Shown: positions 1 through 52,645 of the stretch, in pieces
Layout: each line of letters starts with the position of its first letter
How positions within the stretch are numbered: position 1 is the first letter of the stretch
NCBI RefSeq assembly: GCF_963921235.1
Contig: NC_086101.1
Span: 31,868,001 to 31,932,000, forward strand
Source of the DNA: Mobula hypostoma
Lineage: Eukaryota
Direction: 5' to 3'
DNA: 64,000 bases
The notes under the pieces: model-generated
Seen by the model: only the letters and a program-made list of their open reading frames with translations
Databases searched by the model: none
What the model was told of the DNA's origin: nothing
Translations under genes and position numbers: made by a program

Positions 1-388
1 ATACCGAAGAACATCTTTTTAAGGTGATTGCAGAAAGTGTCGGGGCGATGTCAGAGGGGAGCATGGAACACTGCTGTGGTCGTGATGGAGACTGGCACAT
101 TAAGGACAGTTCAGAGACTCTTAGTTAGTCACATGGATGAAAGAAAAATGGACAATTTGTGAGAGGGATGTGTTAGATTGACCGTGGACTGGTCTAAGAG
201 GTCAGCACAATTTTGTGGGCCAAAGGGCCAGTACTGTGCTATACCGTCCTGCTCCATGACCCTACAGAGAGAGGCCAAGACAACACGGATACTGTTATAA
301 TGGGAGAAGGAAACGTGGTGGGGAATGGTGGGGTGAAGATGGGTGACATTGGACGCCCATGTACCGCACAACCAGTGGTGTTTCTTAC

Positions 389-652
389 CGAGGAACAGGA
401 CGAGGGGCTCGGGGAGACCCCGGTGTTCCACCCGACAGGAGAACTTTGCTGTGTCCGTGGGCTCCACCCGCACCGTCCTGGTCAGCTGGTAGGTGTTGTC
501 GTGGTTGGGGAGGATCCCATGGAAATGGATCTCCTCCAGGATCCGGCCGTCCCGCAGAATAGTCACGTCGATGTACTGAGGGTAGAATCCAGTGGCCACA
601 CAGGAGAGCTGGCGGCCATCCTCGGAGGCGGTGAACGAGACTTCAGGGGGAT
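389..652 (-). CDS. MHC class I alpha3 (Ig-C1) exon, cassette B1
   Basis: 264 bp exon bounded by cag| and |GTAAG, phase 1-1. Encodes PPEVSFTASEDGRQLSCVATGFYP...KFSCRVEHRGLPEPLVLFL with both Ig-C1 cysteines. Confidence 0.95.
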
Positions 653-874
653 CTGGGGTGGGAGAGAAAGAGGAAGCATTGAGTGGAGGTAGGAAGGGGA
701 TGGGAAGAGGAGACTGCGTGGGGGGTGTTGCAGAGGAGGTGGCGGGGCTGGTGAAGGTGGGAAGGGGTGGGCAGAGGAGGCGGCAAGGGGTGGGCAGGGG
801 AGGGTGGAGATGGGGGTTGCAGACACTGACTTCCACTCCCTGGCACACACATTGACCCCACCCCACGCACTCAC

Positions 875-1147
875 TGGGTTCAAGGTGACTCCCCCCGGCC
901 TTGACATATTTCATCAGCCATTCGATGCAGGTGTGCTCCAGGTATCCCTTCCAACCCTGGTTCATGGCTGTGTCCCGGTCCCACTTGTTCTTAGTGATGA
1001 TACCCCAGGGCACAGGGGTCACCCACACCATCCGGTCCTTGTCGAAGAGGATGAAGTCTGACCCATCCCAGCCGTACTGCAGGAACCCGGCAGTGGTCCC
1101 GTCGTCACGGAGCTCACAGCCGGACATCCTCTGGAGAAAGTGGATCC
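875..1147 (-). CDS. MHC class I alpha2 exon, cassette B1
   Basis: 273 bp exon, ttccag|GG...A|GTGAGT. Encodes IHFLQRMSGCEL...WDGSDF...TKNKWD...YLEHTCIEWLMKY with C101/C164, T143, K146, W147, Y159 and Y171. Confidence 0.95.
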
Positions 1148-2410: not shown

Positions 2411-2671
2411 CACTCGTCTGGTTGGTCCGGTACATGAGGGTCTGGATTTCGGCCTGGGCCCACTGCTCATCGCCCTGAGAGATCCTTGTCTCCCGTTCCC
2501 AGTAGTCAGGTCCCTGAGTCTCCGCCATCCACTGCTGACGGGGAACCGACCGTCTCAACACACTGTCGTAGTAACTGATCAACAACTCATCCACATACCT
2601 GACGGTAATGAACTCAGGGACCCCCGACCCCGGGGTCACCGCCGTGGAGAAATAACGGAGAGAGTGAAAGC
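2411..2671 (-). CDS. MHC class I alpha1 exon, cassette B1
   Basis: 261 bp exon, ttccag|GC...G|GTGAGT. Encodes FHSLRYFSTAVTPGSGVPEFITVRYVD...GPDYWERET...YRTNQTS with Y7, Y59, R84 and the N86 sequon. Confidence 0.95.
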
Positions 2672-3678
2672 CTGGAACTGGATCTGAGAGTCAGAGAATA
2701 ACTTATATCTGAAACCAGGACCCTGAGGCCCAAGATGCCGGGCTTCACCCCCAACCCCCTGAGAGAATCAGAGTCCTAAAACCAGAGAATCAGGACTGTC
2801 CCCTCACCCCAAGGGGCATTTCAGCTGCACCTGAAGACAGTGAGAGTCCAAATCCCTGATCACATCTGCAGATCCCTGGCTGAGTTGCCTATATCCATGA
2901 GCTGTGGTGTCCCAACCCGGTGATGGAGCGGGGTTATGAAACAAGACACGTTCACCCGGACCAGACTGGGTTCAATCATCAGTGTGTCTCTCTGAGCTCA
3001 GGGTAAGTTGCTCTGTGAGGATAGGGATGTGCTCAGTGCAGGTGGGAAAACTCCCAATCGGGGTGAGGACTCGTACGTGCTCCCTCCCTGGTTTAGTTTC
3101 TCCCTGCTGTCAGTGGAGAGACCAGCTGAGAACTGAGGTCAGGCCGAAGGAACTAATTCCATACAGTCTGGCCCGCTGACTCTTGCACTGGGGGAAAGTA
3201 GAGCACAAAGTTACAGTTAGTCTATGAGATGATAAGAGGCACAGATAATGTGGACAACCAGCTTTTGCCTTAACCAGGAAGCAACGCCTAATACCGAAGA
3301 ACATCTTTTTAAGGTGATTGCAGAAAGTGTCGGGGCGATGTCAGAGGGGAGCATGGAACACTGCTGTGGTCGTGATGGAGACTGGCACATTAAGGACAGT
3401 TCAGAGACTCTTAGTTAGTCACATGGATGAAAGAAAAATGGACAATTTGTGAGAGGGATGTGTTAGATTGACCGTGGACTGGTCTAAGAGGTCAGCACAA
3501 TTTTGTGGGCCAAAGGGCCAGTACTGTGCTATACCGTCCTGCTCCATGACCCTACAGAGAGAGGCCAAGACAACACGGATACTGTTATAATGGGAGAAGG
3601 AAACGTGGTGGGGAATGGTGGGGTGAAGATGGGTGACATTGGACGCCCATGTACCGCACAACCAGTGGTGTTTCTTAC

Positions 3679-3942
3679 CGAGGAACAGGACGAGGGGCTC
3701 GGGGAGACCCCGGTGTTCCACCCGACAGGAGAACTTTGCTGTGTCCGTGGGCTCCACCCGCACCGTCCTGGTCAGCTGGTAGGTGTTGTCGTGGTTGGGG
3801 AGGATCCCATGGAAATGGATCTCCTCCAGGATCCGGCCGTCCCGCAGAATAGTCACGTCGATGTACTGAGGGTAGAATCCAGTAGCCACACAGGAGAGCT
3901 GGCGGCCGTCCTCGGAGGCGGTGAACGAGACTTCAGGGGGAT
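3679..3942 (-). CDS. MHC class I alpha3 exon, cassette B2
   Basis: 264 bp, intact splice sites; protein identical to the B1 alpha3. Confidence 0.95.
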
Positions 3943-4164
3943 CTGGGGTGGGAGAGAAAGAGGAAGCATTGAGTGGAGGTAGGAAGGGGATGGGAAGAGG
4001 AGAGTGCGTGGGGGGTGTTGCAGAGGAGGTGGCGGGGCTGGTGAAGGTGGGAAGGGGTGGGCAGAGGAGGCGGCAAGGGGTGGGCAGGGGAGGGTGGAGA
4101 TGGGGGTTGCAGACACTGACTTCCACTCCCTGGCACACACATTGACCCCACCCCATGCACTCAC

Positions 4165-4437
4165 TGGGTTTCAGGTGACTCCCCCCGGTCTTGACGTATT
4201 TCATCAGCCATTCGATGCAGGTGTGCTCCAGGTATCCCTTCCAACCCTGGTTCATGGCCGTGTCCCGGTCCCACTTGTTCTTAGTGATGATACCCCAGGG
4301 CACAGGGGTCACCCACACCATCCGGTCCTTGTGGAAGTGGATGAAGTCTGACCCGTCCCAGCCGTACTGCAGGAACCCGGCAGTGGTCCCGTCATTACGG
4401 AGCTCACAGCCGGACATCCTCTGGAGAAAGTGGATCC
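4165..4437 (-). CDS. MHC class I alpha2 exon, cassette B2
   Basis: 273 bp, intact splice sites, open frame; 5 aa differences from B1. Confidence 0.95.
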
Positions 4438-6000: not shown

Positions 6001-6210
6001 CCTCAGTCCATTACATGACCCCCACCCAATCACTACCATCACCTCCACCACCCCACAAACCCCACCGTCACCTTCCACACCCCTCCCCACCCCACTATCT
6101 CTACCATCAGCCCCTCCAACCACAACACCATGCCTGCCATCACCCCCCTAATCCCCACAACTGTGTGTTCCCCTCTGCCACCTCTCCCCGCAGCATGGTT
6201 CCCCACTCAC

Positions 6211-6471
6211 CACTCGTCTGGTTGGTCCGGTTCATGAGGGTCTGGATTTTGGCCTGGGCCCACTGCTCATCGCCCTGAGAGATCCTTGTCTCCCGTTCCC
6301 AGTAGTCAGGTCCCTGAGTCTCCGCCATCCACTGCTGACGGGGAACCGTCCGTCTCAACTCACTGTCGTAGTAACTGATCAACAACTCATCCACATACCT
6401 GACGGTAATGAACTCAGGGACCCCCGACCCCGGGGTCACCGCCGTGGAGAAATAACGGAGAGAGTGAAAGC
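6211..6471 (-). CDS. MHC class I alpha1 exon, cassette B2
   Basis: 261 bp, intact splice sites, open frame; 4 aa differences from B1. Confidence 0.95.
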
Positions 6472-7324
6472 CTGGAACCGGAGCAGAGAGTCAGAGAATA
6501 ACTTATACCTGAAAGCAGGACCCTGACTCCAAGATGCTGGGCTTCACCCCCAATCCCCTGAGAGAATCAGAGTCCTAAAACCAGAGAATCAGGACTGCCC
6601 CCTCACCCCAAGGGGCATTTCAGCTGCACCTGAAGACAGTGAGAGTCCAAATCCCTGATCACATCTGCAGATCCCTGGCTGAGCTGCCTATATCCATGAG
6701 CTGTGGTGTCCCAACCCGGTGATGGAGCGGGGTTATGAAACAAGACACGTTCACCCGGACCAGACTGGGTTCAATCATCTGTGTGTCTCTCTGAGGTCAG
6801 GGTAAGTGGCTCTGTGAGGATAGGGATGTGCTCAGTGCAGGTGGGAAAACTCCCAATCGGGGTGAGGACTTGTACGTGCTCCCTCCCTGGTTTAGTTTCT
6901 CCCTGCTGTCAGTGGAGAGACCAGCTGAGAACTTGCACCAAGTTCCCCACCAGTAGCAGCACTCTTCCAGCTCCTATAGAGTGCTTCTCACTTCACCTCT
7001 GACCCACAGTGATTCCTGGGTACTGAGAGGTATTCCTGGGATTACTGACAGGATGTCCAGAGGGTGGGGCTATTACACCTCCCACAAGAGGGTGACCTCT
7101 GTCCCATGTGCCGCTGTCTCTGGAAAACCACATTGAAAGCAGAGACAGGATCTAACTGTACGACACACTCTCCATTGATGGACAGGATGTCGCTCAGTCA
7201 ACAGAACCAGAGGCAACAGTGGGACAGGAGGAATTTGTGGGATCACTGGTGGAGGAAAGGAATAGGAAGGGTAGGAAAAGAAGGTGCGGCCATTCTATTA
7301 GATAACATTTAGCCTTTAGTGAAG

Positions 7325-7917: not shown

Positions 7918-10900
7918 ATTACGAACAAGAGGAGACCTGCAGATGCTGGAAATCCGAGCAACACACACAAAATGCTGGAGGAACTCAGCAGGCCAGGCAG
8001 CATCTGTGGAAAAAGTACTTTGGACCTTTCGGGCCACAATCCTTCGGCAGGACTGGAGAAAAAAAGCTGAGGAGTAGATTTCATAGGTGGGGAGACGGGG
8101 GAGAGGAACACCAGGTGATAGGTGACACTTGGGTGGGAGGGATGAAGTAAAGACCTGGGAAGATGGTTGGTGAAAGAGACAGAAGCCCACCGAAGAAAGA
8201 AAAAGGGGGAAGGAACACCAGAGGGAGGTGATGGGTGGGCATGGAGATGAGGTAAGAGAGGGAAAAGGGGATGGGAGATGGTCGGGATGGGGTGCGGGGT
8301 GTTGGGGGACATTACCGGAAGTTTGAGAAATCGACGTTCATGCCATCAGGTTGGAGGCTAACCAACCTGTTCCTCTAACCTAAATATGGCCTCATCACGA
8401 CAGTGGAATTGAAATGGGTGGCCGCTGGGAGATCCCACTTGTTCTGGCAGACGGAGCGTAGATGCCTGGCAAAGCGGTCTCCCAACCTACATTGGGTCTC
8501 ACTGATATACAGGAGGCCACACCGGGAGCACCGGACACAGTATATGATCCCAACAGACTCACAGGTGAAGTGTTGCCTCATCTGGAAGGACTGTTTAGGG
8601 CCCTGAATGGTAGTGAGGGAGGAGGTGTAGGGGCAGGTGTAACACTTGTTCCGCTTGCAAGGATGCTCAATGGGATTCTCAATCGCCGGTTCTTTGACTT
8701 TCTCACGTCCTGCAAGGATCGGAAGATCTCCCGTCTACAGACCACCAAACCTATTGACTCCTATGCCGGCAGGCCCAGACGTCTCCAGACCGCGATCTCT
8801 GCTGCTGACCTCAACGGCTCTAACTATCCAGAGCAGATTCAAAACCCGGACTCCACCACCATGAGTGCAGGTTCCAATGACCTCAGACATCACCAAAGTG
8901 CCTATTGTGCAACCTGCAACTCCATCTCCGGCCTTGACCTCCATGCTGGGTCTTCAGGAGCTGCTGCTGGCACCCCCGTCTCCCCCTCCCCCACCGCCAT
9001 TCCTCAATCCCGTTTCTTTCAGATCCCACCGCCAGCTCTTGGGCTCTCGGAGACTCCCTCTTTTCTCCCTCCACCATCCTGAACACCCCAAACCTCCTTT
9101 CCCCTCAGACACTATCAACCCCCAACCACCTCTGATCCCAGCTCCCATCCGTGCTGGGTCTTTACCATTCCCTCCAACCTTCCCCTCTCTGAGGCAGAAT
9201 GTTCTGTCCTCAGTAAGGGCCTCAGCTTTGTCCCCCTGTGCCCATGACTCAGTGAGTTCCACATCCGCCACAACGCTAAGCTCTTCTTCCGCCATCCCCG
9301 TCTCCGAGCCTATTTCTTTGGCAGGGAATCTCCACCACGCACCAATGACCCCTTCTCCCATCTTCAACCATTCTCCTCTTCCTTGATGCCCCACCTTGGT
9401 CTTCTACCTGCTCTGGACCTTTTCATTGCCAACTGTTGACATGATATTAGCTGTCTAGACTTTAATACTCCTCTCTCCTATTCCAACCTAATTTCTTCCG
9501 AACGATCGGCTCTCCACTCCCTTCGCTCTAATCCTAACCTCACCATCAAACCCGCAGATAAGGGAGGCACTGTAGTAGTCTGGCGTACTGACCTCTACTT
9601 TGCTGAGGTCCAGCGCCAACTCTTAGACACCTCTTACTTACCCTCGAACAGAATCCCACTAAGGAACACCAGGCCATTGTCTCCCACACCATCACCAACC
9701 TTATTGACTCTGGGGATCTCCCATCCACCGCCACCAACTTCATAGTTCCTGCACCCCACACCTCCTGTTTCTACTTCTTACCCAAGATCCACAAACCTGT
9801 TTGTCCAGGTAGACCCATTGTTTCAGCTTGTACCTGCCCCACTGAACTCATATCTGCATACCTCGATTCTGTTTTATCCCCCCAGTTCAGTCCCTTCCCA
9901 CCTACATCCGTGACACCTCACATGCTCTTGATCTATTCAAGGATTTCAAGTTCCCCGCCCCCATCATCTTATTTTTACTATGGATGTCCAGTCCCTATAC
10001 ACCTCCATCCCCACCAGGAAGGCCTCGAACCTCTCTGTTTTTTCTGGACACCAGACCTAACCAGTTCCCCTACACCACCACTCTCCTCTACTTAGTGGAA
10101 CTTGTCCTCACTCTAAATAATTTCTCCTTTGGCTCCTTCCACTTCCCTCAAACAAAAGGTGTAGCCATGGGCACTTGCATGGGTCCCAGCTATGCCTGCC
10201 TTTTTTGTCGGCTACATGGAACATTCTATGTTCCAAGCCGACACCGGTGGCCGCCCCCCATTTTCCCTATGCAACATCGACGACTGCTTTGGTGCTGCTT
10301 CCTGCAGCCATGCAGAGTTCGCCAACTTCATCCACTTTGCCTCCAACTTCCACCTTGCCCTTAAATTCGTCTGGTCCATTTCCAACACCTCCCTTCCCTT
10401 TATCAATCTCTTTGTCTCTGTTTCTGGGAACAGCTTATCTACTGATGTCTATTACAAATCCATGGACTCTCACAGCCACCTAGCCTACACCCCATCCCAT
10501 GCTACTACTTGTAAAAATGCCATCCCCTTTTCTCAATTTACCCACCTGCACTGCATCTGCTCTCAGGATGATGCTTTTCATTCTAGAATGAAGGAGATGT
10601 CATCCTTTTTCAAAGAAAGGGGTTTCCATTCCTCCACCATCAATGCTGCCCTCAATGGCATCTCTTCCATTTCATGCACCTCTGCTCTTACTCCAACCTC
10701 CCTCCTCCGGCCACCCTACCTGGGATAGGGTTCCTGTTATCCTCACCTACCATCCCACCAGTCTCCGCATCCAGCACATAATTCTCCGAAACTTCCACCA
10801 CCTCCAACGGGATCGCACCACCAAGCACATTTTTCCCTCCCCCCCCCCCGACTTTCCACTTTCCGCAGGGATCGCTTCCTGCATGACTCCCTCGTCCATT

Positions 10901-11979: not shown

Positions 11980-13300
11980 CCTTCCTCATTCTTCTAAATT
12001 CTGGCGAGCACAAGCCCAGAGCCATCAGTCACTCCACATACGATATTATTCCTGGAATCATTCTCATGAACCTCCTCTGAATCCTTTTCAATGTCAGCAC
12101 ACCCTGTCCTAAATAAGGGGCCCAGAACTGCTCACAACTCTCCAAGTGAGACCTCACCAGTGCATTAGAGAGCCTTAACTTTCTAAATATCCTTAGCATC
12201 CTTGCTTTTATATTCTAGTACTCTCGAAATGAATGCTAACATCGCATTTCCCTTCCACGAAATCCTGCACAAGAACTCCCGAATCCCTTTGCACCTCAGA
12301 CTTGTGAATTTTCTCTCCATTTAGAAAATATTCTATGCCTTTACTCCTTCTACCAAAATCCATGACCATACACTTCCCGACACTGCATTCCATCCGCTAC
12401 TTCTTTGCCCCTTCTCCTAATCTGTCTATGTGCTTCTGCCGACCCCTTGTTTCCTCACCACTACCTGTCCCTCCACCTATCTTTGTGTCATCCTCAACCT
12501 GCGCCATAAGCAATCAATTCCATCATGCACATTATTGACATACAAGGTAAAGAGAAGCGGTCCCAACACCAGCTCCTGCAGACAGCACTAGTCACCAGCA
12601 GCCAAACAGAAAAGGCTTCTATTATTACCACTTCTAGCTTCCTGCCAATCAGCCAATGCACGATTCATGCGATATCTTTCCTGTAATACCATGGTCCCTT
12701 GTTAAACAGCCTCATGTGAGGCACCTTGCCAATGGTCTTCTGAAAATTCATGTACACAGCATCCACCAATTCTCTATCCTGTTCATTACACACTTTGACA
12801 AGATCATCCCTCATTCTCCTAATCTCCAATGACAAAACACCCAAGCCACTCAACCACTCTCCATAACAGTCCTTCCAGCCCAAGGAACATGCTGATAACT
12901 CACTTCTGGTCCATTACAACTTAATGGCTTCTTTCCTGAAACAGACTGACCAAAACAGATCACAATACTCCAAATGAAACTGCTCCAATGTCCCAGAAAT
13001 AATAAATCAACTTCCATACTCAGTGCCTTGACTGATGAAGGTGATCCTGCCAAAACCCTTCTTTGCCACCCTATCTACCTGTGATGCCACTTTCAGAGAA
13101 CTTTGTAGTTGAAGACCTTGAACCTCTTCTACAACACTCCCAACTATTCACCTTGAAAGTCATGCCAGGATTTGATTTCCTAAATTACAGAACCTCATAC
13201 TTATCTGAACTAATTTGTCATTGCATGAACCATTTACACCACTGGCCAAGATCCCTCTGTAATTTTTGACAATCTTCTGCACAGGCTGTCTGTTTGGTTA
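11980..13300 (-). mobile_element. CR1 LINE ORF2 fragments
   Basis: Minus-strand remnants such as MECSVGKCMVMDFG, YFLNGEKI, VDAVYMNFQKTIGKVPH. Confidence 0.75.
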
Positions 13301-13429
13301 CCTTCTTCAATGCCTGTCTGTCTATTTATTTATTTAGAGGACAAGCCCTTCCAGCCTTTCAAGCCAAACTGCCAGCAACCCCCATTTAAATTTTAGCCTA
13401 GTCCTAATCACAGATCAATTGAAAATGAC

Positions 13430-13615
13430 CAATTAACCAACTAACTGGTACATCTTTGGACTGTAGGATGAAACTGGAGTACCTGGAGAAAACCCAGGCA
13501 TGCTCTGGGGAGGGAGTACAAACTCCTTGAGGAAGATGCTAGAACTGAAGCCTGAAATCTGATGCCCTGAGCTGTGATAATGTCACACTAACTGCTCCAC
13601 TACCGTGGCACCCAA
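13430..13615 (-). mobile_element. tRNA-derived SINE remnant
   Basis: Reverse complement of a SINE head and body (GGGTGCCACGGTAGTGGAGCAGTTAG..., AGGAGTTTGTAC). A paralogous copy lies at about 60100-60255. Confidence 0.55.
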
Positions 13616-13919
13616 CACGATGAGGGTCAGTGTGCAACATGCTAAGAAGCTGGGCTTCTAAAGGAAGAGGTCATGTAAGGTCTTTGAAGCACATGAAAGT
13701 GGCTAAGTCCATAGGGCCTGTTGGGATATACCCAGGTTATTGAGAGAGGCAAGAGATAAGATTGATAGGGCCTGATAATGATCTTTATGAACTGTGATCT
13801 TGAATAATTGTTCTTTTGTGGTAAAAGGGAAAGTCCTGGTAACTACAGGGCAGTAGTAGGGAAGCGACTGACAAAAACTAAATGAAAGGACAACACTCTG
13901 ACTCCTCCCACTGATCCAA

Positions 13920-15611: not shown

Positions 15612-16697
15612 AGGATGTGGTGCAGACTAATCCGAGCATTGCATTTAAGAGGCAATTGGACACTTGAGTAGGAAAAATCCGGCAAGGACGGTTCCAGGAC
15701 CGGCTGAGAAAGAAAGGAGGCACGGTGCTTGCGGCCTCATTCCGTAAAAACCCAGAGTGACAGAAACTCCGAAGATTTCATCCCTGGGCGAGGAAGGATC
15801 TTCGATTAGAAGACACCTGCTGGGCTGCACCTGGGGACAACTTGAAAGACTGGCTAGGATTCTAGCGATCTGCAGTCGGCGGCCCCTGCCCCAGTAGGGG
15901 AGATGGGATTCAGCTGGGCTTGAATGGGAAAGGTATAGGAGGGATGTTGTATATCTATGCACAACCCCCTCTGGTCAGTTGCACCTCAGTTCCACCATTT
16001 TACCCGCATTGTCTCTCCAACATCAGAAGCGGAAAACGCTGGAATTTCTGAACAGCTGAGCCAGCACCATATTTAATGTTTCAGGTCCAGAACTGGGAAA
16101 CTGAGAAAACGAGTGGGTGGGAGGGATTGGACAAGTACACTATCTCTGATACGGTGGTCAGCGCTGGCCGGTACATACACTCGTCTGATGATCAGATGCC
16201 TTCACAATGCCAAGGTGCTTCACTTACTGACACTCCTGTAACACATTTAACCTGCTTCGCACAGCCCAGTCCGAACCTCTCGCTGTCCTCTTGGGCCAAG
16301 CTGCGGAAATGCCCGCTGCACAGCTTTACCGCAGTCATGAACGTGTCGGGAGGAAGCAGTTCTCCAGCATGGGGACGGAGGACTGAACTGGCTCGTCCAT
16401 ACCGTGCTATAAACCAGACCTCTGCCCACCTCCATCCCAGGTCAGTGAAGGTGCCGAGGTTAACCCATACACCCCCCCCCCCCGCGCTTCCCTCCCTACT
16501 TCCCCTCCCGTATGCAGTCTCTGCGGGGTTTCCCACCACATCAACCTCCCACCCCCACCACCACACTGATACTCATTGTGCTCAGGCTGGGTGGCGTGGG
16601 ACCTTGACATCTTGACGAGGGACGATCACGCTGTGTCCATCCGCTCACTTACTGACCGGGGGCTGAATGTCCCGCTGACCATTGCCCCTTCACTCAC

Positions 16698-16749
16698 CTG
16701 CGGAGACCCCTCCACACAGGAGGGCCAGCAGTAGTAGACGCAACACCAT
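16698..16749 (-). CDS. MHC class I signal-peptide (leader) exon, probable exon 1 of gene B
   Basis: ATG...GCA G|GTGAGT, 52 bp, phase 1, encoding MVLRLLLLALLCGGVSA. In frame with alpha1 at 6471 (G+GC = Gly). Confidence 0.85.
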
Positions 16750-17148
16750 TCCTCCCTCTGTATCAGAACTGTTTCGAGTTCCCAAGTCCTCCACCCGTGC
16801 TCAGTCTGGTATCAATCGCACTCGGTTCATCGCTCCCTTCTGCGGACTGTGCGCGGTGTCCGAACTGCACGCTGATTGGTCCGCGGGATGCCATTCAGCA
16901 TTTGCCTCTGCTTAGTGTCATTGGACTCTGGGCAAGAGTGGTCACTGAAGTTTGAGTCGCTTGGAAATAAAGTTACCAATTTCTGCATCCATCCAATCAG
17001 AAAAATAGCTGTATGTGTGGACGACGGGTTGAATAGAGTTTGGGAAAAAAATCGACAGTGTAGGAACGGGAGGGAGAGACAGAGTCCTGCTGTTACAGCT
17101 CCCGGAGCAGACCCTGGGGGCCAAACTCCGGTGACACAGGAAGGAGGA
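16750..17148. promoter_or_regulatory. Putative bidirectional promoter between two divergent class I leaders
   Basis: CTGATTGG at 16872-16879 and CCAATCAG at 16993-17000 in mirror arrangement, plus ATTGG (~16920) and CCAAT (16976). CpG-rich. Confidence 0.55.
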
Positions 17149-17200
17149 ATGAAGCTACTTCTACTACTGTTTGCCCTCCTCTGTGGATGGGTCTCCACAG
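17149..17200 (+). CDS. Second MHC class I-type leader exon (orphan in this window)
   Basis: ATG...ACA G|GTGAGT, 52 bp, phase 1, encoding MKLLLLLFALLCGWVST. Clearly paralogous to the minus-strand leader, including GGAGGA just before the ATG. Confidence 0.8.
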
Positions 17201-17689
17201 GTGAGTGAAGACACTGAAGGAGATAGATAAGCTGGTAAATAAATTCGGCGCGAGAAGCATCCGTGGAAGAACAGAGATGGTCAGTGCCGTGGGATTGAGA
17301 GTGCAGAGGGGGGGAAGCCAGTCCAGAGAGGTGAACCAAGGGGCGAGACAGGGGATGGTAGGTGTTGGGTGGAACCAGGTGAGGGCCCAGCGAATGGACC
17401 GATGGAGTTCAGAGACAGACTCTGGTAGAACCAGAGGGGAGGGGTGATGAGCAGATGGATCCAGATGGCAGAGGAGATGGGGAGGGTAGGCCAAGGAAGG
17501 AGAATCTCAAGTAAATAGATGTATTTAAACCCTTTTTTTTTACTGAAGAGGCATAGGCATCTCTGATCACGGTGCGGTCGTGGTGTAGGAGGTTGGGGTA
17601 ACAAGTGGAATAGAGGGGCTGGGGGAGTGAACAAGGATAGAGAGAATACCAGAAATGGGAAGGGAAACACAGAGGGTACCGCTAACTGA

Positions 17690-18110
17690 AATCTGAAAGT
17701 AGAATGTACAGACCATCGGGTCGTGAAGGGTGAAAGGACAGGTAAATGGCGGGGACAGTACACACGATCCTACTAAATGGCTGCCCCTTGATCTCGCTGA
17801 TGTAAATCAGGCTGGAGTACCTGAAAACAGAGGAGGAGTTTGGAAGTGGTGAAGACGAATATAAATTCACCTAGAATGGGTGTTCAGGTCCCTAGATGGT
17901 GGCGGTAGAGAGGGTATGGGGACACCTGTGGTGCCTGTAGAGGGACGGGTTGAGTGGATCAGTGAGTCACGAAGGGAGTGGTCCCTACAGGAAGCCAAAA
18001 GTGAAGTATGAGGAGAAGGTGTGACGAGGTGGTATTCCACTGTAGCTGATGGAAATGACGAAGATGATATGCTGGATATGGAAGCTGATGTAGCACTGAT
18101 AGAGGGAGAT
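17690..18110 (-). mobile_element. Penelope-like element 3' fragment (degraded)
   Basis: Reverse-complement similarity to the RT C-terminal/GIY-YIG region of the 7918-11699 element. Confidence 0.5.
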
Positions 18111-19889
18111 AGTGATGGGTTCTTTGCTAAACCTTGTTTCCAATCTACTTAGGCTGGGTCATTCTTATGTCGAATTGACAATTTGAATTCCAGAGTTCCC
18201 TGTTGTCCCTTTGCATTTGTATTCAAACCCTTTATGATATTACGATCGCTGGTTACTGGATACTCCCGACTGATAGATGCAAAACTTGGTCAAACTCTTT
18301 CCCCAGAACCAAATCCAACAAAGAGGCTTCCTTAATCGGCCAGACACATCCCAGAGATCAGACACAATGAAATTTATTATCACTAACTTACCTGATGTGA
18401 AATTTGTTATTTTACAGCAACAGTGCAGTAAAAAAATGACAAAATTATTGTAACTTACAAAAAAACAAATAAACTCTGGGAAGGAAAGGAATAATGATAT
18501 TGTGTTCATTGAGCTTTCAGAAATCTGATGGCGGAGGGGAAGGAGCTGCTCCTGAATTAATGAGCGTGGGTCTTCAGGCTTTTGTGCTTCCACCTGATGT
18601 TAGTATGGAGAAGAGGGCATGTCCCAAACAGTGAAGTTACCAAATACCTATAGTCTGTAGCGCTTGCATGTATCCGCAATTTCCGAGTAATTGTCTTTCA
18701 ACGTGCTCCCGGACCATTTCAATCTGTAGAATATCCCAATGGTGAAACCTTCCGCATACTGTCTCCTAAATCTGTATAGATACATCATGTTCTTCATTGT
18801 GCCAGGACATTCTCTCTTCTCACAAGACATTCCTTCATTCCTGTTTTTCATATACAATCTGATCGCATTTGCTTAGAGTCGCTCCGTGGGTACGCGTTGT
18901 CCTCTTATGGTTTACCTTTTGTGTTTAATTGTTTGCCTTTGGCCTATATCTGGCAGGTGCCTCGTGTGGTATGATGGAGATAATTAATCTCTCTGCATTT
19001 ATCACCTGCATTCGATTAGAGAATTTAATTGGCGCGGTATTTTCAATGTGTTGTAGTGGTTAGCTTTGGGAATTTTGGTTCGTCTGGATACTGATGTTTT
19101 CTGATTGGGCCTGAATTCCTACGTGTTTCAGTGTGTATTTTAGAGGGGTGCATGCCAACCCCTCTTTGCTCTCTCGTTGTGGTTCCCTGTCAGGTGAAAC
19201 TCAGACCGAGTTCTTCTGTCCGCGCCTTGTGGCGCATCGCACCTTATCGTTTCTTCATCATTTGTCTGTTTTTTTTTTACAAGGCCGAGTTCCGAGCTCG
19301 ATTCTGAACCCAGCACGGATGAAAAGTGTGCGAACACCCGGCTGGTTTGGACCCGGGACAACTCGTCTCGACGTCCGGGTGAATGTCACGGCAACACCGG
19401 GCAGCTCTGTTCTGTGTATCCGCAGTGATTTCAGTTCGTCCAAATTCTGTACAGGTTACCTTGGCTCCAGTTAGTTTTTCTCCAGTTAATTTCCAGTAAT
19501 ATATCTTTAGTTTTTCTGAATTGCCGACGTCTCTGTGATCCCTGTACCTGAGTTCGCTGTGACGACCGAACCGAGACAAATGACCTCAGCAATGTAGGGC
19601 GTGCGATCAGATCTGGTAAAGCAGAGAGCCACGGTCAGTAGGCACGAGCAGCAGCTGTAGGAGATGGTCACGTTTTCGAGGAAAATATAAAAACCGAGGA
19701 ATCATGTATGCCACGACCCGGGGGAGAGTGCCAACAGCTCCCGAAATCTGTCTGCTCCGGAGCGATTTGACGGGATCCCGGGATGTGACGGGTTTGTCAC
19801 ATAGTCGTGTCGAACTGATGCCGCACAAGTTTCAGCATATCCTTTCTAAGATAAATGGGCCACACCATTACATCCGTGCTTTTATATTC

Positions 19890-21209: not shown

Positions 21210-22560
21210 AAAGAAAGTCTCTTTATTTCAAAGTTATCATTTTTTTACATTTCTGTGATTTGGATGAAGGGTTCTTCTTGTTTTTATTTTTGTTCTTGAC
21301 ATTGTGTGTTTCAGAATACTGGACACCAACCTCCTTTGAGCACTGCAAGCAGTCCAGCCTTCACCTCTCTTTGAATGAAAGGTTGGGAGGAGGTTCTTCA
21401 TCCTTGATTCATCTTGAGATTTTCTTTTTCTTCTTCTCCCACCATTTTCAGTAGATTCCTGTGTTTGATCAGATGTCTTTTGACTTGTTTGGGTGAGTAA
21501 TTTTGTGGTAAGCCCCTTAGGAATCCTTATAGCTGAGAATCTCTCTGCTTTGGCTTTATCCAAGAACTTTTTGTATTTCTCAATCTTTTCATCCAAATCC
21601 CGTAGTGTCTGTTTTGGCTTGTCCACACACTGGTGATTATTCTCCTGAAGTTTACTTCGTTCAGCACCAGTTGATTCTTTCCCATCACTATCTTCATTAC
21701 CTTGCTCTTCCTCTTCATCCAAAATGTCGTCTTCATCTTAAGAAATGTTCGCAGGTAGAAGGTCCGTCTCAGAAAATTCAGGCGCCACGTTGATTTCCCC
21801 AAAGTTTTGCCTTGCGTATGCAACTATTTGTAGTACTATTGGATTTTCAGCTTTTTCATGTTCTTCAACAATTGCTGTTTCTGATAACCCTTTCACATGA
21901 TCAGATTTGTTTGGGTCTTTTTCCACTTTTAACATAGTTAATGGCTGAGAGTCACCTTCAGCATCTGGTGGTTTAACATAAAAAGGTATTCGCCCTCTTT
22001 GCCAATCATTCAAAACCATTTTGGCCACAGTTTGTATGTCAGATTCTCCACCCTTCAAAAGCTTTCCTGTTCTGAATGCAAGCTTCTCTAAGAAATCAAC
22101 TGGATTGTTTCAAACGTTTCTGTATCCAGAATATGTACTTCTGAATTATAAGGTGTGATTCGGTCATTCAGAAGAGACATCAGAAGCTGGGTTTGTTTAA
22201 GAATTACCCTATAAGGGTCTTTCATAACACTGCCCATCTTTTGGAATTGCTGCAGAGATGACTGCTTTATGACTTGAGTGTTAGCAAGCCAGCTGATGTT
22301 TGGTTCCACTCGAGATGTGGTGCCAGATGTAACTGTTGACTGGAACTGCAGTGACTTGACAATCATCCCATGTTTGTTTCTTCGTTCCTTCTGGCTGTAC
22401 CTATTCAGACGTTAAATAGTTGCCCTATCCCTCTTGAGGCCTCCCCCATCTTTGGGCCAATCTGGGTTGGTGCGGGCGGTGGATGGGTTGGCTGAGCTGC
22501 GGCCCTGGTACTGAGCCTTCACCATCTTCGACACCCTGGGACGGGAACCGAGTCCCGCAT
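21210..22560 (-). pseudogene. GNL2: Processed pseudogene of nucleolar GTPase GNL2 (Nog2), internally deleted
   Basis: ATG at 22525 gives MVKAQYQGRSS.NPS..TNPD...RDRATI*RL.; also [67 protein letters not shown] and DEKIEKYKKFLDKAKA. No introns, with stops and frameshifts; AATAAA at 21227-21222. Confidence 0.92.
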
Positions 22561-31369: not shown

Positions 31370-33395
31370 GCAGAAATGAGCTTTACTGATATTGTGAAAG
31401 TAATGCAGGGACATTTAGAACCAAAGCCATTATTGATTACAGAACCCTTTAGGTTTTATAAACAGAGTCAAAAGGAAGGAGAGTCCATTTCATCGTATGT
31501 GGCTGAACGGAAGTAGCTGGTACTTTGGTAATGGGTTTACGGATGCACTGACAGATCATAAAGTTTGTAGAGTGTTACAAGAAAGCATTCAAACTCGGCT
31601 CCTAACTGAAGCTTAACTTACATTAAAAAGAGCAGTTCTGGCATAAGCACTTGATGGGGGTGAGTTTGCCGGAGAAACTGTCAGCTGACATGAATCATGG
31701 AGTGAGATTAGCCTGTGTTATGTGAGTTACTGAGGAAGGAAATAGCCTATCACTTCCATCGGTTAACCCAGTAGCAGAGGGTGTCATTTCCTATTTTGCC
31801 ATGATTTGTACCAAAACCAAAGTAAAGTCCGGGTTGCAACCTCTGCCTGACTTGGATGCTGGTCTGTGCGAGGGGGTAAAACTGCCTTGCAAGTTATGCA
31901 GGCAATGGCGCCATGAGAGATATGCTGGTCCTCCTGCCCCTGCTGATATTTGTACAGATGATGTGCTCATTGATGATTTGGAAGGGGTCGTTGAGGCCTG
32001 GAAGGGGCCTGGGAAGGTTGAACGCTCCCATCTCGATGGCAAACAACCAGTGGAGCAGCAGAGAGTGTTTGCTGATTTTTCACAGTTGTTTCAGCAGAGA
32101 CCAGGGCTGACAAAGGTCCTAACACATTCCACTGGGATCAGGGCTCTCTACACCAACACTGCCACAGAGTGTCAGAGTGAACAGTGGGAGCCCTGAATAA
32201 TGAGAAATCGGACCATGCTGGAGCTGGGAGTCAGCGAGCCTTCAGACAGTGAGTGGAGCTGTCCTATTGTTACTGTCCCCGGGAAGGATGGCACCCGGAG
32301 GTTACGCATTGACTTCCGGAAGCTGAATGCCATTTGTTTATTTGAAGCTTATCCCATGTCCCGTATCGATGACCTACTAGAAAGGATTGAAGGGACAAAC
32401 TCCATCACTACACTGGACCTTAGTAAAGGCTACTGGCAGGTTCCCCTGGATGACTGAACAAAATCCCTCACTCCCTTCCGCACCCCCTGGGTCTGCTTCC
32501 ATTCACCGAGATGCCCCTTGGTCTTCATGGTTCCCCAGCAATGCTCTAGCAGCTGATGGACGGAGTCCTGCAAGGTTGTGAGGACTGCAATGTGGCCCAC
32601 CTGGATGATGTGGTTGTCTAAAGGCAAGTGGTCACTGCACTTCAACCATTTGTGATGGACCGCGGGGAATATTCATGCTGCTGGTCTCACCCTTGATCTA
32701 CGAAACTGTGAGTGAGCAAAAAGGGAAGCTAAATATCGAGGCTGCCAGTTGGGACATGGAAAGTTTCGAGACCAGGTGGACAAAGTGGAAATGATCTACA
32801 ACAGTCCTCTGCCTCACACCAAGGAGGAAGTGAGGCCCTTCCTGGGTCTGGTATGGCAGGTTCAATTGCTAATACACCACTCTGGCCACACCTCAAACTA
32901 ATCTTACTGGAAAGTTTATAAGCAACCCACTGACATGGATAAGTGAGTGCGAGAACACTTTTCAAACCCTTAAAGCTCGGAGCCCTGACTTTGACAAACA
33001 GGTCTTTGTCCAGCTGGATGCCCCAGGAGGAGGTATTGGAGCAGTGCTGACCCCGGGAGTACCTGGACAAGAGCGCCCTGTCCTTTACCTGAGCCGACAT
33101 CTCCTCCCAAGGGAAACCAAGCCTTCCACCATTGAAAAGGAGTGTCTGGCCATTAAGTTGGCCCTTGGCGGCCTCTGGTACCACCTCCTTGGCAGGGAGT
33201 TTGACCTTTAAAGAGACCTCAGAGTGTTGACATGGATTCAGAGTATGAAGGGCCATAATGCCAGAGTGAGACAGTGGTAGCTGGAGCTCCAACCCTTCAA
33301 ATTCTGTGTCCATCATAAAGCAGGAAAAGGAATCTTCCTGCAGCCTGTCTGTCTCAGGAGCCAAACATCATCGCTGAAGGAGAGGAGGGTGGTAA
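31370..33395 (+). mobile_element. Gypsy LTR-retrotransposon gag/pol remnants
   Basis: gag-like FRFYKQSQKEGESISSYVAE; RT WSCPIVTVPGKDG..RIDFRKLN...YPMSRIDDLLE...TLDLSKGYWQVP; RNase H-like remnants at about 33000-33300. Confidence 0.8.
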
Positions 33396-39689: not shown

Positions 39690-42600
39690 AGGAGTGTCAA
39701 GCTTTGGTTCAAATGAGGCTTCGGCTTTAAAGAGATTTTGGCCCTGGGTTAGATTTTGTTAAAGTTCCCTTTTGGTTTCTCTTACTGTACCTGGTGTAGT
39801 AAACGGCTGTTATATATTCTTCATGCTGGATGCTGGAGTCCAGGGAGACCCAGAGTCTCCCAGGGAACTACATCTGTGTGAAGAGCATCCGGCTGCAGCT
39901 TCTGGAAGACCGTGTTAGGGATCTGGAGCAGCAGCTGGATGACTTTCATCTTTTACAGGAGAGTGAGGAGATAATCGATCAGAGTTACAAGGAGGTAGTC
40001 ACCACTAATTTGCAGGAGGCAAGTAGCTGGGTGATCATCAGGATAAATGGAAATGTGAATGGGCAGTTAGCACAGAGCAGCCCTGTGGCCATTCCCCTCA
40101 ATAATTAGTATACTGCTTTGGATACTGTTGTGGGTGGGGGGTGACCTCCCAGGTGAATGCCATGCAGACTGGGTTACCAGCACTGAGCATAGGTCCATGG
40201 TACAGAGGGAAAGAGGGAGAAGAAGGGAGCGGTAGTGAAAGGGGACTCAGTAGTCAGAGAACAGGCAGGGGATTCTGTGGACGTGACTGGGACATCCGAA
40301 TGGTATGTTGCCTCCCAGGTGCCAGGGTCTGGGCTGTCTCGGATTACGTTCACAACCAATTGGACAGGGAATGAGTGCAGCCAGATGTCTTGGTACATAT
40401 TGGTACCAATGACATGGGAAGGAAAAGCAAAGAGGTCCTGAAGAGAGAATTTAGAGAGCTGGCAGAGAGCTGAGAAGCAGGATCTCCAGGGTAGTAATTT
40501 CTGGATTGCTGCCTGTGCCACCAGTGAGGGTAGAAACAGGATGATTTGGCAAATTAATGCGTGGCTGAGAATCTGGTGCAGGGGGCAGGGCTTTGGGTTC
40601 TTGGATCATTGGGATCTCTTCTGGAGGAGGTATGACCTGTTCAAAAGTTATGGGACACACCTGAACCATTGGGAACTGGAGTGAAAGGACTCAGGACAGG
40701 ACGGATGGTAAATAAGCAAAGATAGCTTGCAGTCAGACAGTCAGGAAGGGCAGGCAGATAATAGAACAAAATTGTAGCCAACAGGGCGAGTATCAGTACA
40801 TTCGGGATGCAAAATCAAAAAGGTTAGCAAATGTAGTACTCAAAGTGTTATATCTCAATGCACGGAGTATAAGAAATAAGGTGGATGATCTTGTTGCAAT
40901 ATTACAGATTGTCAGGTATGATGTTGTGGCCATCACTGAATCGTGGCTGAAGGATGGTTGTAGTTGGGAGCTGAATGTCCAAGGTTACACATTTTATCGG
41001 AGAGATAGGAAGGTTGGCAAAGGGGGTGATGTGGCTCTACTGGTAAAGAATGGTAACAGATCAGTAGAAAGATGTGACATAGGATTGGAAGATGTTGAAT
41101 CCTTGTTGGTTGAGTTGAGAAATTGCAAGGGCAAAAGGAACCTGTTAGCAGTTATACAGGCCTCCCAACTGTGACTGGGATGTGGACCACATATTACAAC
41201 AGGAAATAGAAAAGGCATGTCAAAAGGGCAATATTATGACAGTCATGGGAGATTTTAACATGTAGGTCGTTTGGGAAAATCAGGTTTGAAATGGATCTCA
41301 ACAGAGTGAAGGTGTTGAATGCCTATGAGCTGGCTTTTCAAAGAGCAGTTTGTTGTTGAGCCCACTGGGGAATCAGATACACTGGATTGGGTGTTATGTA
41401 ATGAACCGGAGGTGATTAGGGAGTTTAAGATAAAAGAACGCTTAGGAACCAGTGATCACAATATGACTGAGTCCAACTTGAAATTTGATAGGGAGAAAGT
41501 AAAGTCTGATGTAGCAGTATTTCAGTGGAATACAGGAATTTACAGTGGTATGAGAGAGGAGTTGGCCAAGGTAAATTGGAAGGAGATGCTGGCAGGAATG
41601 GTGTGAGTTTCTAGGAAAAATGAGGAAGGTGCAGGATCGATAATGAAGAAAATGAATTTCTTCAAAAATGAAGATGGGGACAGCCGTGAAAGCGCAGAGG
41701 AACATTTGGAACAACTTCTGAAATGCCTGCTTCGCTGCCACTGCTACTGTGTGATCGAGAATCTCTGGAGACGTAGGCCCCAAATCCTTAGCTTTGCGTG
41801 TTGCCGGGGCCGAGGTTCAAACGCTCGGCAGAGATGCTGCTCAGTGCTCGGTGTCAAATAGGTGGTCAGAGGCTCGGAGTTTTTCGGACGGACTCAGAGT
41901 TGAACTGTCGTCAGATGCTTCCGGGATGCTGCATCAGCAAGTTGGCGGCGCTGGGGGTTTACCGTCTGCGTGAGATGATGGGACTTTGAGAGATTCTGAG
42001 ACTTTTACTGTGCCATGGTCTGTTCTTATCAAATTATGGTATTGCTTTGCACCGTTGTAACTATATGTTATAATTATGTGGTTTTTGTTAGTTTTTAAGT
42101 CGGTTTGTCATGTGTTTTCTTAATGCATGCATTACTAAATGACAATAAAGGGACTGAGTGTCCTCATAACCATGCTCAAATAGCAAAATAGTACAACCGT
42201 GGCTGACAAGGGAAGTCAAAGCTAATGTAAAAGTAAAGGAGAGGGCATACAACAAAGCAAAAATTAGCAGGAAGACAGTGGATTGGGAAGCTTTTAAAAA
42301 CCTACAGACAGCAACGAAAAGAATCATAGGAGGGAAAAGATGAAATCTGAAAGCAAGCTGTCAAACAATAGCAAAGTGCATAGAAAAAGTTTTTTCAAGT
42401 ATGTAAAAAATGAAAGAGAGATGACAGTGGATGTAGGACCACTAGAAAATGAGGCTGGAGAAATAATAACAGGGGACAAGGAGATGGCAAGTGAACTAAA
42501 TGAATATTTTGCATCAGTCTTCACTGTGGAAGACACGGGCAGTGTGTCAGATGTTGAAGGGTGTGAGGGAAGTGAAGTGAGTGTAGTTACTGTTACAAGG

Positions 42601-52349: not shown

Positions 52350-52645
52350 CTATTGGTGATTCAGAGAAACAGTCACATCAGTGACAGAGACAGTGTTAAC
52401 CCCGATTCTCCTTCACCAACCCCACCCACACCCTCCCATCCCACCAACCACCCTGTCTCAGAAACACGGATTTCTCCCCCTGTCCTCTCCTGGGCCTGTG
52501 GTCAGCAGTGACCCCTCACTGTGCTCTTGGACCAGAGGTCAACAGTGACCCCTCACCATCACAGCTCCCAGCCCTGGGCCAGTGGTCAGCCAAGCCCCCT
52601 CCCTCTCACTGCCCATGTACCGCCCCACCAGTGAGTGTCTCTTAC

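What the first reader, a model, noticed from the sequence alone, without database searches (positions are those of the whole stretch)
16698..17206. Two paralogous class I leader exons head-to-head around a 399 bp mirror-symmetric promoter
The minus leader (MVLRLLLLALLCGGVSA) and plus leader (MKLLLLLFALLCGWVST) are both 52 bp, phase 1, followed by GTGAGTG and preceded by GGAGGA. Between them CTGATTGG (16872) and CCAATCAG (16993) mean each direction meets an inverted CCAAT first and a direct CCAAT box 130-156 bp before its ATG. Established: inverted CCAAT (Y/enhancer B) and CCAAT boxes occur in class I promoters, and the familiar MHC bidirectional promoter is TAP1-PSMB9. Inference: a bidirectional class I/class I promoter produced by inverted duplication.
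Basis: partly seen in the sequence, partly recalled or inferred. Interest (0 to 1): 0.75.

Follow-up and report, generated by a model that had tools for sequence, protein, structure and literature searches.

The report
Orphan inverted copy of class I leader
A devil-ray MHC class I gene has a normal one-way promoter, and an inverted copy of about 80-90 bases of its signal-peptide exon sits just upstream with no gene attached, so this is a stray exon fragment and not a two-way class I promoter.

Summary
Two 52-nt, phase-1 leader ORFs (minus 16749-16698, plus 17149-17200) face away from each other across 399 bp. Each is preceded by GGAGGA and followed by GTGAGTG. CTGATTGG lies at 16872 and CCAATCAG at 16993.

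The interpretation does not hold.
- **Minus leader is a used exon.** It is exon 1 of Mobula hypostoma LOC134346730. One cDNA contig joins it to the alpha1 exon and ends near 16804, the likely transcription start.
- **The duplication is small.** Homology between the copies covers only about 79-92 nt. It takes in the coding part of exon 1 and not the promoter. The spacer has no mirror symmetry beyond chance.
- **The CCAAT pair is older than the copy.** The same two octamers, in the same order and orientation, lie 121-129 bp apart upstream of two sawfish class I genes. Those genes have one leader and no inverted copy. I read the pair as the Y box plus CCAAT box of a one-way class I promoter.
- **The plus copy is an insertion.** It sits between blocks that are collinear with sawfish.
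- **Nothing uses it.** No class I exon lies on its strand for 47 kb, and no gene is called within 10 kb. Two contigs cross its donor unspliced.

Most likely it is an orphan pseudo-exon. Interest is low.

The parts
16698..16749 (-). Coding part of exon 1 (signal peptide MVLRLLLLALLCGGVSA plus one base, phase 1) of Mobula hypostoma LOC134346730, the tandem-ectodomain class I gene. The GT donor is at 16697-16696.
   Evidence: Sequence. RefSeq proteins P0059 and P0144 begin with this leader joined to the alpha1 sequence. An X1 contig covers 16698-16804, and its 25-nt overhang matches the alpha1 exon start exactly.
16750..16807 (-). 5' UTR and probable transcription start. The contig ends at 16804 and runs into sequencing adapter. 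An Inr-like CCAGACT has its A at 16807. There is no TATA box.
   Evidence: loose end behind 16804 is Illumina adapter; sequence. The start site is an inference, not a mapped 5' end.
16872..16879 (-). Proximal CCAAT box. It reads CCAATCAG on the minus strand, about -70 from the inferred start and 130 bp before the ATG.
   Evidence: The block CGGACCAATCAGCG is invariant across Mobula and two sawfish class I genes.
16950..16992 (-). Conserved promoter block between the Y box and the CCAAT box, containing ACTTTATTTC and GACTCAAACT. It is T-rich and loosely IRF/ISRE-like. The binding factor is unknown.
   Evidence: Invariant columns in the three-way alignment.
16993..17000 (-). Distal inverted CCAAT. 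It reads CTGATTGG on the minus (coding) strand, which is the Y-box orientation, about -190 from the inferred start.
   Evidence: It is invariant in both sawfish promoters, 129 bp upstream of their CCAATCAG, against 121 bp here. The Y box is an inverted CCAAT bound by NF-Y (PMC7866136).
17001..17050 (-). X-box-like region upstream of the Y box. It is clear in sawfish (GGCAAC...TGATGACG) and only partly kept in Mobula (CAAACTC, CAAC, CAGCT).
   Evidence: The assignment as X1/X2 rests on remembered consensus and was not tested.
17134..17211 (+). Orphan inverted copy of the leader exon. The ATG is at 17149, the 52-nt ORF MKLLLLLFALLCGWVST ends at 17200, and the GT donor is at 17201. It is flanked by 15-16 nt of copied 5' UTR and 10 nt of copied intron. 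Read unspliced, the ORF stops after 19 codons.
   Evidence: X1 record 7 (17166-17362) and X3 record 18 (17000-17237) run unspliced across the donor. None of 142 fetched class I proteins carries this leader.
17119..17227 (.). Interval specific to the Mobula side, lying between blocks collinear with the sawfish upstream region. It holds the leader copy, so I read it as the insertion or duplication interval.
   Evidence: window 17119-16651 matches L001 9616-10091, and window 17717-17227 matches L001 8986-9427. The sawfish interval 9427-9616 holds a simple repeat instead.
17227..18816 (-). Upstream non-coding region collinear with the region upstream of the sawfish orthologue, in five further blocks. 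No coding gene is detected.
   Evidence: E-values 5e-20 to 6e-5. No genes are called upstream.
6209..6471 (-). alpha1 exon whose first 25 nt follow the minus leader in the cDNA contig (acceptor CAG|GC at 6471). The identical start at 2646-2671 in the next module cannot be excluded as the partner.

Best explanation
The 399-bp spacer is the ordinary one-way promoter of the minus-strand class I gene LOC134346730. Read 5' to 3' on the minus strand, it has an X-like region, a Y box (CTGATTGG, an inverted CCAAT for NF-Y), a conserved T-rich block, a CCAAT box (CCAATCAG) about 70 bp before the start, and a TATA-less Inr-type start near 16804-16807. A 55-58-nt 5' UTR and the 52-nt leader follow, and the leader is spliced across a 10.2-kb intron to alpha1.

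The plus 'leader' is a copy of about 79-92 nt of the coding end of exon 1. It was inserted in inverted orientation just upstream of this promoter, in the Mobula lineage, after that lineage split from sawfish. It brought no promoter and has no exons to splice to. It keeps an ATG, an open frame and a GT donor only because it is short and moderately diverged.

It is most likely a non-functional orphan pseudo-exon. At most it is carried passively in low-level unspliced transcription upstream of the promoter.

Shown: the anatomy, the splicing of the minus leader, the collinearity with sawfish, the conservation of the motif pair, and the absence of plus-strand class I exons. Inferred: the start site, the factor assignments (NF-Y, RFX/CREB) and the non-function of the copy.
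For: (1) The X1 contig covers 16698-16804 at word depth about 1100. Its overhang beyond 16697 matches the alpha1 exon start at 6446-6470 and 2646-2670 exactly, and its other end runs into adapter.
(2) RefSeq proteins P0059 and P0144 of M. hypostoma start with the minus leader.
(3) Arm homology covers only 79 nt, with weak extension to about -30. There is none in the spacer or in the intron flanks.
(4) Mobula and sawfish are collinear on both sides of the copy, and the sawfish orthologue has a single leader with no inverted copy in 10 kb.
(5) The Y-box plus CCAATCAG pair and intervening blocks are invariant in three promoters from two species. Both sawfish genes have a single leader and no inverted copy upstream, and one of them is an ordinary 343-aa gene.
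(6) tblastn finds alpha1, alpha2 and alpha3 exons only on the minus strand, and none on the plus strand from 17201 to 64000.
(7) No protein gene is called in the 10 kb upstream of the orthologue in M. hypostoma, M. birostris, Hypanus sabinus or Pristis pectinata.
(8) Contigs at depth 2-3.5 bridge the plus donor unspliced, and one starts at 16961, upstream of the supposed plus CCAAT box.
(9) In a neutral simulation, 27-54% of copies with 5-10 substitutions keep the ATG, the frame and the GT.
Against: The plus copy still looks like a usable signal-peptide exon. It has a good Kozak context, a hydrophobic core, a strong GTGAGT donor and the phase 1 shared by class I exons. Leaders starting MKL exist in stingray class I genes, and T at position -1 occurs in one annotated shark gene.

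The RNA evidence is weak. It comes from assembled contigs of three small runs from one study. The contigs carry no strand information, rare spliced forms would be dropped, and class I contigs may be filtered as human-like.

Contigs do cover 16961-17766 in all three runs, so some transcription upstream of the promoter is possible.

Annotation was checked for only 10 kb. No DNA of the closest relatives (M. birostris, Hypanus, Hemitrygon) could be read.
Confidence: 0.8

Rival explanations
1. True bidirectional promoter. The plus leader is exon 1 of a second, unannotated gene (class I or other secreted protein) whose remaining exons lie beyond the window or were not recognised. The two NF-Y sites serve both directions.
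For: The ATG, ORF, phase-1 end and strong donor are intact. A CCAATCAG lies 156 bp before the plus ATG. Low-depth contigs cover 16961-17766.
Against: There is no class I exon on the plus strand for 47 kb. No gene is called within 10 kb in four assemblies. Contigs cross the donor unspliced, and one begins upstream of the supposed CCAAT box. The motif pair exists without a second leader in sawfish. The copy lacks a promoter of its own. No fetched protein carries this leader.
Confidence: 0.06
2. The promoter fires weakly in both directions, as many vertebrate promoters do. It makes a short unspliced non-coding upstream antisense RNA that happens to contain the leader copy. This overlaps the best explanation and is not exclusive of it.
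For: Unique contigs in three runs cluster at 16961-17766, directly upstream of the promoter, and unique coverage is sparse from 17767 to about 19800. An AATAAA lies at 17238. CpG observed/expected in the spacer is 0.70 against 0.44 further upstream.
Against: The contigs carry no strand, depth is 2-4, and the runs are only guessed to be RNA. The coverage could be genomic DNA carry-over or minus-strand read-through from upstream.
Confidence: 0.3
3. Relic of a once complete head-to-head class I gene pair. The plus gene's body was later deleted and only its leader survives.
For: MKL-type leaders exist in stingray paralogues. Codons 2 and 3 of the plus copy differ from the neighbour by two bases each. 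That could mean a different source paralogue.
Against: Sawfish collinearity resumes within about 15 bp on either side of the copy. The copy starts inside exon 1 and lacks the promoter and the start of the 5' UTR. It shares the Mobula-type intron start GTGAGTGAAG, not the sawfish type.
Confidence: 0.08
4. Assembly artefact, in the form of a spurious small palindrome.
For: None beyond the inverted layout.
Against: The arms are 85% identical, not about 100%. Contigs from other runs (X1, X3) and from the DNA runs X4-X7 carry the plus copy with 0-2 differences.
Confidence: 0.01

Closest known systems
MHC class I promoter with a W/SXY module (Y box is an inverted CCAAT bound by NF-Y) followed by a CCAAT box, as described for mammalian class I genes (PMC7866136, PMC4374748)
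   Same: On the coding strand an inverted CCAAT (CTGATTGG) lies upstream of a direct CCAAT box and the start site. An X-like GCAAC...TGACG stretch lies about 15-20 bp upstream of the Y box in sawfish. The layout is shared by several class I genes.
   Different: The Y box and CCAAT box are 121-129 bp apart here. X1/X2 are poorly kept in Mobula. No S box, kappaB site or canonical ISRE was identified. Binding of NF-Y, RFX or NLRC5 is untested in any elasmobranch.
Isolated class I gene fragments and pseudo-exons in mammalian MHC regions, including the class I-derived 5' end of the lncRNA gene HCP5 (PMC6562477)
   Same: A partial copy of a class I gene's 5' end sits apart from any class I gene body.
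   Different: This copy is only about 80-90 nt. It lies inverted within 350 bp of its probable source and brought no promoter. No stable transcript is shown.
TAP1-PSMB9 bidirectional promoter
   Same: It lies in the MHC, and two ATGs face away from each other across less than 1 kb.
   Different: TAP1 and PSMB9 are two complete genes, both transcribed and spliced. Here only one side has a gene.

Membership tests
Bidirectional promoter (divergent gene pair) | Two complete genes head to head with starts less than about 1 kb apart | tested here: not met
   Only the minus side has a gene body. There are no plus-strand class I exons to 64000 and no called gene within 10 kb.
Bidirectional promoter (divergent gene pair) | Stable, processed transcripts in both directions | tested here: inconclusive
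   The minus leader is spliced to alpha1. The plus side has only unspliced, strandless contigs at depth 2-4. No stranded reads or CAGE were available.
Bidirectional promoter (divergent gene pair) | Promoter symmetry produced by duplicating the promoter | tested here: not met
   The spacer has no inverted self-similarity. Homology is limited to 79-92 nt of the exon. The motif pair is present in sawfish genes that have one leader and no inverted copy.
MHC class I SXY/CCAAT promoter | Y box (inverted CCAAT) on the coding strand upstream of the start | tested here: met
   CTGATTGG lies at 17000-16993 on the minus strand and is invariant in three promoters.
MHC class I SXY/CCAAT promoter | S, X1 and X2 boxes at fixed spacing upstream of Y (S-X 16 bp, X-Y 20-22 bp in NLRC5 targets, PMC4374748) | tested here: inconclusive
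   Sawfish has GGCAAC..TGATGACG about 15-20 bp before Y. Mobula keeps only parts of it. No position matrix was available and the consensus was recalled from memory.
MHC class I SXY/CCAAT promoter | Occupancy by NF-Y, RFX, CREB and NLRC5 | not testable with these tools
   This needs ChIP or reporter assays.
Class I leader (signal peptide) exon 1 | ATG, hydrophobic core, small residues at -3 and -1, phase-1 end and GT donor | tested here: met
   Both copies meet this. The leader consensus from 29 distinct elasmobranch leaders is ..LLCGGVSA. The plus copy departs from it at W(-4), T(-1) and F(-10).
Class I leader (signal peptide) exon 1 | Spliced to an alpha1 exon on the same strand | tested here: not met
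   This row is for the plus copy, which fails: there is no alpha1 exon on its strand and contigs cross its donor unspliced. The minus copy meets the feature.
Orphan exon fragment (pseudo-exon) | Partial copy without the rest of the gene, absent from the orthologous site of an outgroup | tested here: met

The most novel reading that the evidence does not exclude
The plus copy is not inert. One possibility is that it is a working first exon spliced to distant, unrecognised exons, which would make this a genuine two-way class I promoter. The other is that it acts in cis. Any minus-strand transcript starting upstream of 17211 would carry its reverse complement. That could pair with the real leader in a hairpin of about 71 bp covering the ATG and the 5' splice site (modelled RNA 17220-16680: -246.9 kcal/mol, z = -10.1). 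Such a hairpin would silence upstream-initiated transcripts.
Probability: 0.06. Interest if true: 0.6.

Novelty: new member of a known kind. Interest (0 to 1): 0.2.

Why it matters
The finding removes a tempting but unsupported claim of a class I/class I bidirectional promoter.

There is a modest positive by-product. The promoter of a ray class I gene can be placed: a start near 16804-16807, a CCAAT box near -70 and a Y-type inverted CCAAT near -190. The same Y-to-CCAAT layout is conserved between devil ray and sawfish, in both tandem-ectodomain and ordinary class I genes. That gives a concrete starting point for asking whether the NF-Y/RFX/NLRC5 enhanceosome logic of mammalian class I genes already existed in cartilaginous fish.

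The cDNA junction is also the first transcript-level evidence seen in this scan that the leader of the unusual tandem-ectodomain gene is expressed and spliced to an alpha1 exon.

Tried and rejected
- **Leader copies elsewhere.** A search for further leader copies in the window by blastn-short and by six-frame patterns found only these two. The third class I gene body (52539-57095, minus) therefore has its leader outside the window.
- **Extended mirror symmetry.** A test of the spacer and of the intron flanks found none.
- **Plus-strand coding partners.** Pfam on ten ORFs between 15 and 33 kb gave only a GNL2-like NGP1NT piece on the minus strand and a weak reverse-transcriptase hit.
- **Closest relatives.** The look-up of encoding contigs returned annotation but no DNA for M. 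hypostoma, M. birostris and Hypanus sabinus because the files were too large. Isoforms P0002, P0060 and P0023 were not on record. Two look-ups failed as busy.
- **Antisense ORF search.** A protein search with the 170-aa antisense ORF spanning the copy, meant to catch ORFs called on other species' contigs, found nothing. This says little.
- **Second run search.** It listed only the same organism, so there is no information from congeners.
- **Decay of the signal peptide.** I considered and dropped this argument. T at -1 occurs in an annotated shark gene, so only W at -4 is unusual.
- **Intactness as a sign of selection.** I considered and dropped this too. Neutral simulation keeps the copy intact 27-54% of the time.
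- **Canonical motifs.** I looked by eye for a TATA box, a kappaB site and a canonical ISRE and did not find them.

Full report
**1. What is in the sequence**

- On the minus strand, an ATG at 16749 opens a 52-nt leader encoding MVLRLLLLALLCGGVSA plus one base. It ends at 16698 and is followed by GTGAGTG.
- On the plus strand, an ATG at 17149 opens a 52-nt leader encoding MKLLLLLFALLCGWVST plus one base. It ends at 17200 and is followed by GTGAGTG.
- Both are preceded by GGAGGA, and the two ATGs are 399 bp apart.
- CTGATTGG sits at 16872-16879 and CCAATCAG at 16993-17000.

The two leaders form an inverted repeat of 71 nt at 85%. A local alignment extends this to 79 nt, from 16 nt before the ATG to 10 nt into the intron. 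It scores 91 against 20.7 +/- 2.2 for shuffles. A looser alignment hints at weak similarity back to about -30.

Nothing else is mirrored.
- The spacer aligned to its own reverse complement scores 16 against 15.8 +/- 3.3, and 144 of 300 shuffles reach that score.
- The intron-side flanks score 18 against 15.7 +/- 2.4.

'Mirror-symmetric promoter' therefore reduces to two octamers, which lie 74 and 47 bp from the midpoint.

**2. The minus leader is a working exon 1**

The window is from Mobula hypostoma. RefSeq proteins P0059 (isoform X2, 747 aa) and P0144 (isoform X1, 838 aa) of LOC134346730 begin with the minus leader followed by GFHSLRYFS. This is the tandem-ectodomain class I gene already noted by the scan.

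All class I alpha1, alpha2 and alpha3 exons in the window lie on the minus strand. There are three modules, at 2669/1145/653, 6469/4435/3943 and 57095/54352/52910.

Laying the contigs of three small runs gave one contig in X1 covering exactly 16698-16804, at word depth about 1100.
- Beyond 16697 it continues with 25 letters whose reverse complement is the first 25 nt of the alpha1 exon. The match is exact at 6446-6470 and at 2646-2670. The acceptor is CAG|GC, which restores a Gly codon with the last G of the leader. This contig therefore derives from spliced RNA.
- Its other end, at 16804, runs into Illumina adapter. That is what fragments ending at an mRNA 5' end produce. An Inr-like CCAGACT has its A at 16807, and there is no TATA box.

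I infer a start at about 16804-16807 and a 5' UTR of 55-58 nt. This is an inference from one contig, not a mapped cap site.

**3. The spacer is a conserved one-way class I promoter**

The sawfish (Pristis pectinata) orthologue was fetched as L001. Its gene occupies 10001-46217 and also has three modules. It has one leader at 10001-10052 and no inverted copy in the 10 kb upstream.

The Mobula minus strand and L001 are collinear for about 2 kb upstream of the leader:

| Window (minus strand) | L001 | Length, identity, E-value |
|---|---|---|
| 17119-16651 | 9616-10091 | 495 nt, 64%, 5e-44 |
| 17717-17227 | 8986-9427 | 507 nt, 59.8%, 5e-20 |

Four further blocks continue the collinearity out to window 18816.

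A second sawfish gene, an ordinary 343-aa class I gene (L002), was aligned with these two. All three promoters share the following, in the same order on the coding strand:
- CTGATTGGA
- ACTTTATTTC and GACTCAAACT
- CGGACCAATCAGCG
- several smaller blocks down to the ATG

The distance from CTGATTGG to CCAATCAG is 129 bp in both sawfish genes and 121 bp in Mobula.

The 'inverted CCAAT first, direct CCAAT second' arrangement is therefore a property of ray class I promoters whose genes have a single leader and no inverted copy. It is older than the Mobula leader copy. It fits the known design in which the Y box of the W/SXY module is an inverted CCAAT bound by NF-Y, and in which MHC-I promoters carry such a module (PMC7866136). 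S-X and X-Y spacings of 16 and 20-22 bp are reported for NLRC5 targets (PMC4374748).

Upstream of the Y box, both sawfish genes have GGCAAC..TGATGACG. To my recollection this resembles X1/X2. Mobula keeps only parts of it. I leave the X and S assignments open.

**4. The plus leader is an inserted fragment without a gene**

The only stretch of the Mobula upstream region that does not align collinearly with sawfish is 17119-17227. That stretch is where the leader copy sits, at 17134-17211. The matching sawfish interval, 9427-9616, holds a simple repeat. Separately, the copy matches the sawfish leader region only in reverse orientation (window 17207-17116 against L001 10056-9966).

The copy shares the Mobula-type intron start GTGAGTGAAG, where sawfish has GTGGGTG. 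It therefore arose on the Mobula side, after the split from the sawfish lineage. It starts inside exon 1, so it lacks the first 25 nt or so of the 5' UTR and the whole promoter.

Nothing was found for it to join.
- No class I exon lies on the plus strand between 17201 and 64000.
- ORFs there are transposon-like or unidentifiable.
- None of 142 fetched class I proteins has this leader.
- No protein gene is called in the 10 kb upstream of the orthologue in M. hypostoma, M. birostris, Hypanus sabinus or Pristis.

In the laid contigs, X1 record 7 (17166-17362) and X3 record 18 (17000-17237) each bridge the donor at 17200|17201 by at least 35 nt without splicing, at depth 2-3.5. X1 record 6 begins at 16961. 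If these contigs are plus-strand RNA, that places the supposed plus CCAAT box inside the transcript rather than upstream of its start.

**5. How strong is the negative evidence**

The evidence has clear limits.
- The contigs have no strand and drop rare forms.
- They come from one study and are only guessed to be RNA.
- Class I contigs may be filtered as human-like. That probably explains why the leader contig appears in only one run.
- Low-depth unique coverage does cluster at 16961-17766 in all three runs. Weak unspliced transcription upstream of the promoter is possible, and I give it about 0.3.

The intact ATG, frame and donor of the copy are not evidence of selection. With 5-10 random substitutions on the 54 relevant bases, 54% to 27% of simulated copies stay intact.

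The copy is also not visibly decayed as a signal peptide. Among 29 distinct elasmobranch leaders, only its W at -4 is unseen. T at -1 occurs once in an annotated shark gene.

Five of its seven changed codons are amino-acid changes. The copy is too short for that to mean much.

**6. Origin and age (inference)**

A small inverted duplication right next to its source fits a replication template switch. Codons 2 and 3 differ by two bases each, and MKL-type leaders exist in stingray paralogues. A fragment from another class I paralogue therefore cannot be excluded.

The arms differ by about 13-15%, while collinear non-coding sequence differs by 29-40% between Mobula and sawfish. From this I roughly estimate that the copy is about a quarter to a third as old as that split. 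If so, M. birostris should have it and more distant stingrays may not. I could not read their DNA.

**7. Verdict**

The feature is an ordinary class I promoter and exon 1, plus an orphan inverted leader fragment. It is a new instance of known kinds, and interest is low.

The most novel reading still open is that the copy is a real first exon, or that it pairs with the true leader in upstream-initiated transcripts. A modelled RNA containing both arms folds at -246.9 kcal/mol with z = -10.1, but no transcript spanning both arms was seen. I give this reading about 0.06.

Noticed in passing
window 16690-17050 (-); L001 9690-10062; L002 9680-10062: Ray class I promoters share a fixed layout: CTGATTGG, then ACTTTATTTC and GACTCAAACT, then CGGACCAATCAGCG 121-129 bp downstream of the first motif. 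It is conserved between devil ray and sawfish, and between a tandem-ectodomain gene and an ordinary 343-aa gene. It may be an elasmobranch SXY-type module.
   Followed up: partly
window 16698-16804 (-) joined to 6446-6471 or 2646-2671 (-): A cDNA contig in run X1 shows the leader of the tandem-ectodomain gene LOC134346730 spliced to an alpha1 exon across a 10.2-kb (or 14-kb) intron. It ends in adapter at 16804, the likely start site. This is transcript-level support for expression of that unusual gene.
   Followed up: partly
window 21237-22366 (-): Three nearly contiguous ORFs resemble nucleolar GTP-binding protein 2 (GNL2). One has an NGP1NT domain at E = 4e-23. They are separated by only 13-27 nt (stop codons included) and have no introns, which suggests a processed pseudogene.
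   Followed up: partly
window 52539-57095 (-): A third class I gene body (alpha1 57095, alpha2 54352, alpha3 52910; 73-90% identical to the other modules) has no leader exon in the window. Its intron between alpha1 and alpha2 holds a long tandem array (54409-55830) that reads as proline/histidine-rich ORFs.
   Followed up: no
window 129-1127 and 3419-4417 (-): The alpha2 exon, the intron and the alpha3 exon read through as one 332-aa ORF without a stop in both modules. The intron translates as a proline-rich linker.
   Followed up: no
window 6146-7228 vs 56775-57855; 12055-13891 vs 57908-60520: Intron 1 of LOC134346730 is collinear with the region upstream of the third gene's alpha1 exon. This suggests that gene's leader lies roughly 3 kb beyond 60520, near or past the window end.
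   Followed up: no
window 16680-17220 (-): An RNA containing both leader arms would fold into a long hairpin (-246.9 kcal/mol, z = -10.1) covering the ATG and the 5' splice site of exon 1. No transcript spanning both arms was seen.
   Followed up: partly
window 40845-47463 (+), 31801-32457 (+), 10192-10728 (+): Several reverse-transcriptase and LINE-like ORFs, including an intact-looking 342-aa reverse-transcriptase ORF at 46093-47121, fill the region between the class I genes.
   Followed up: no
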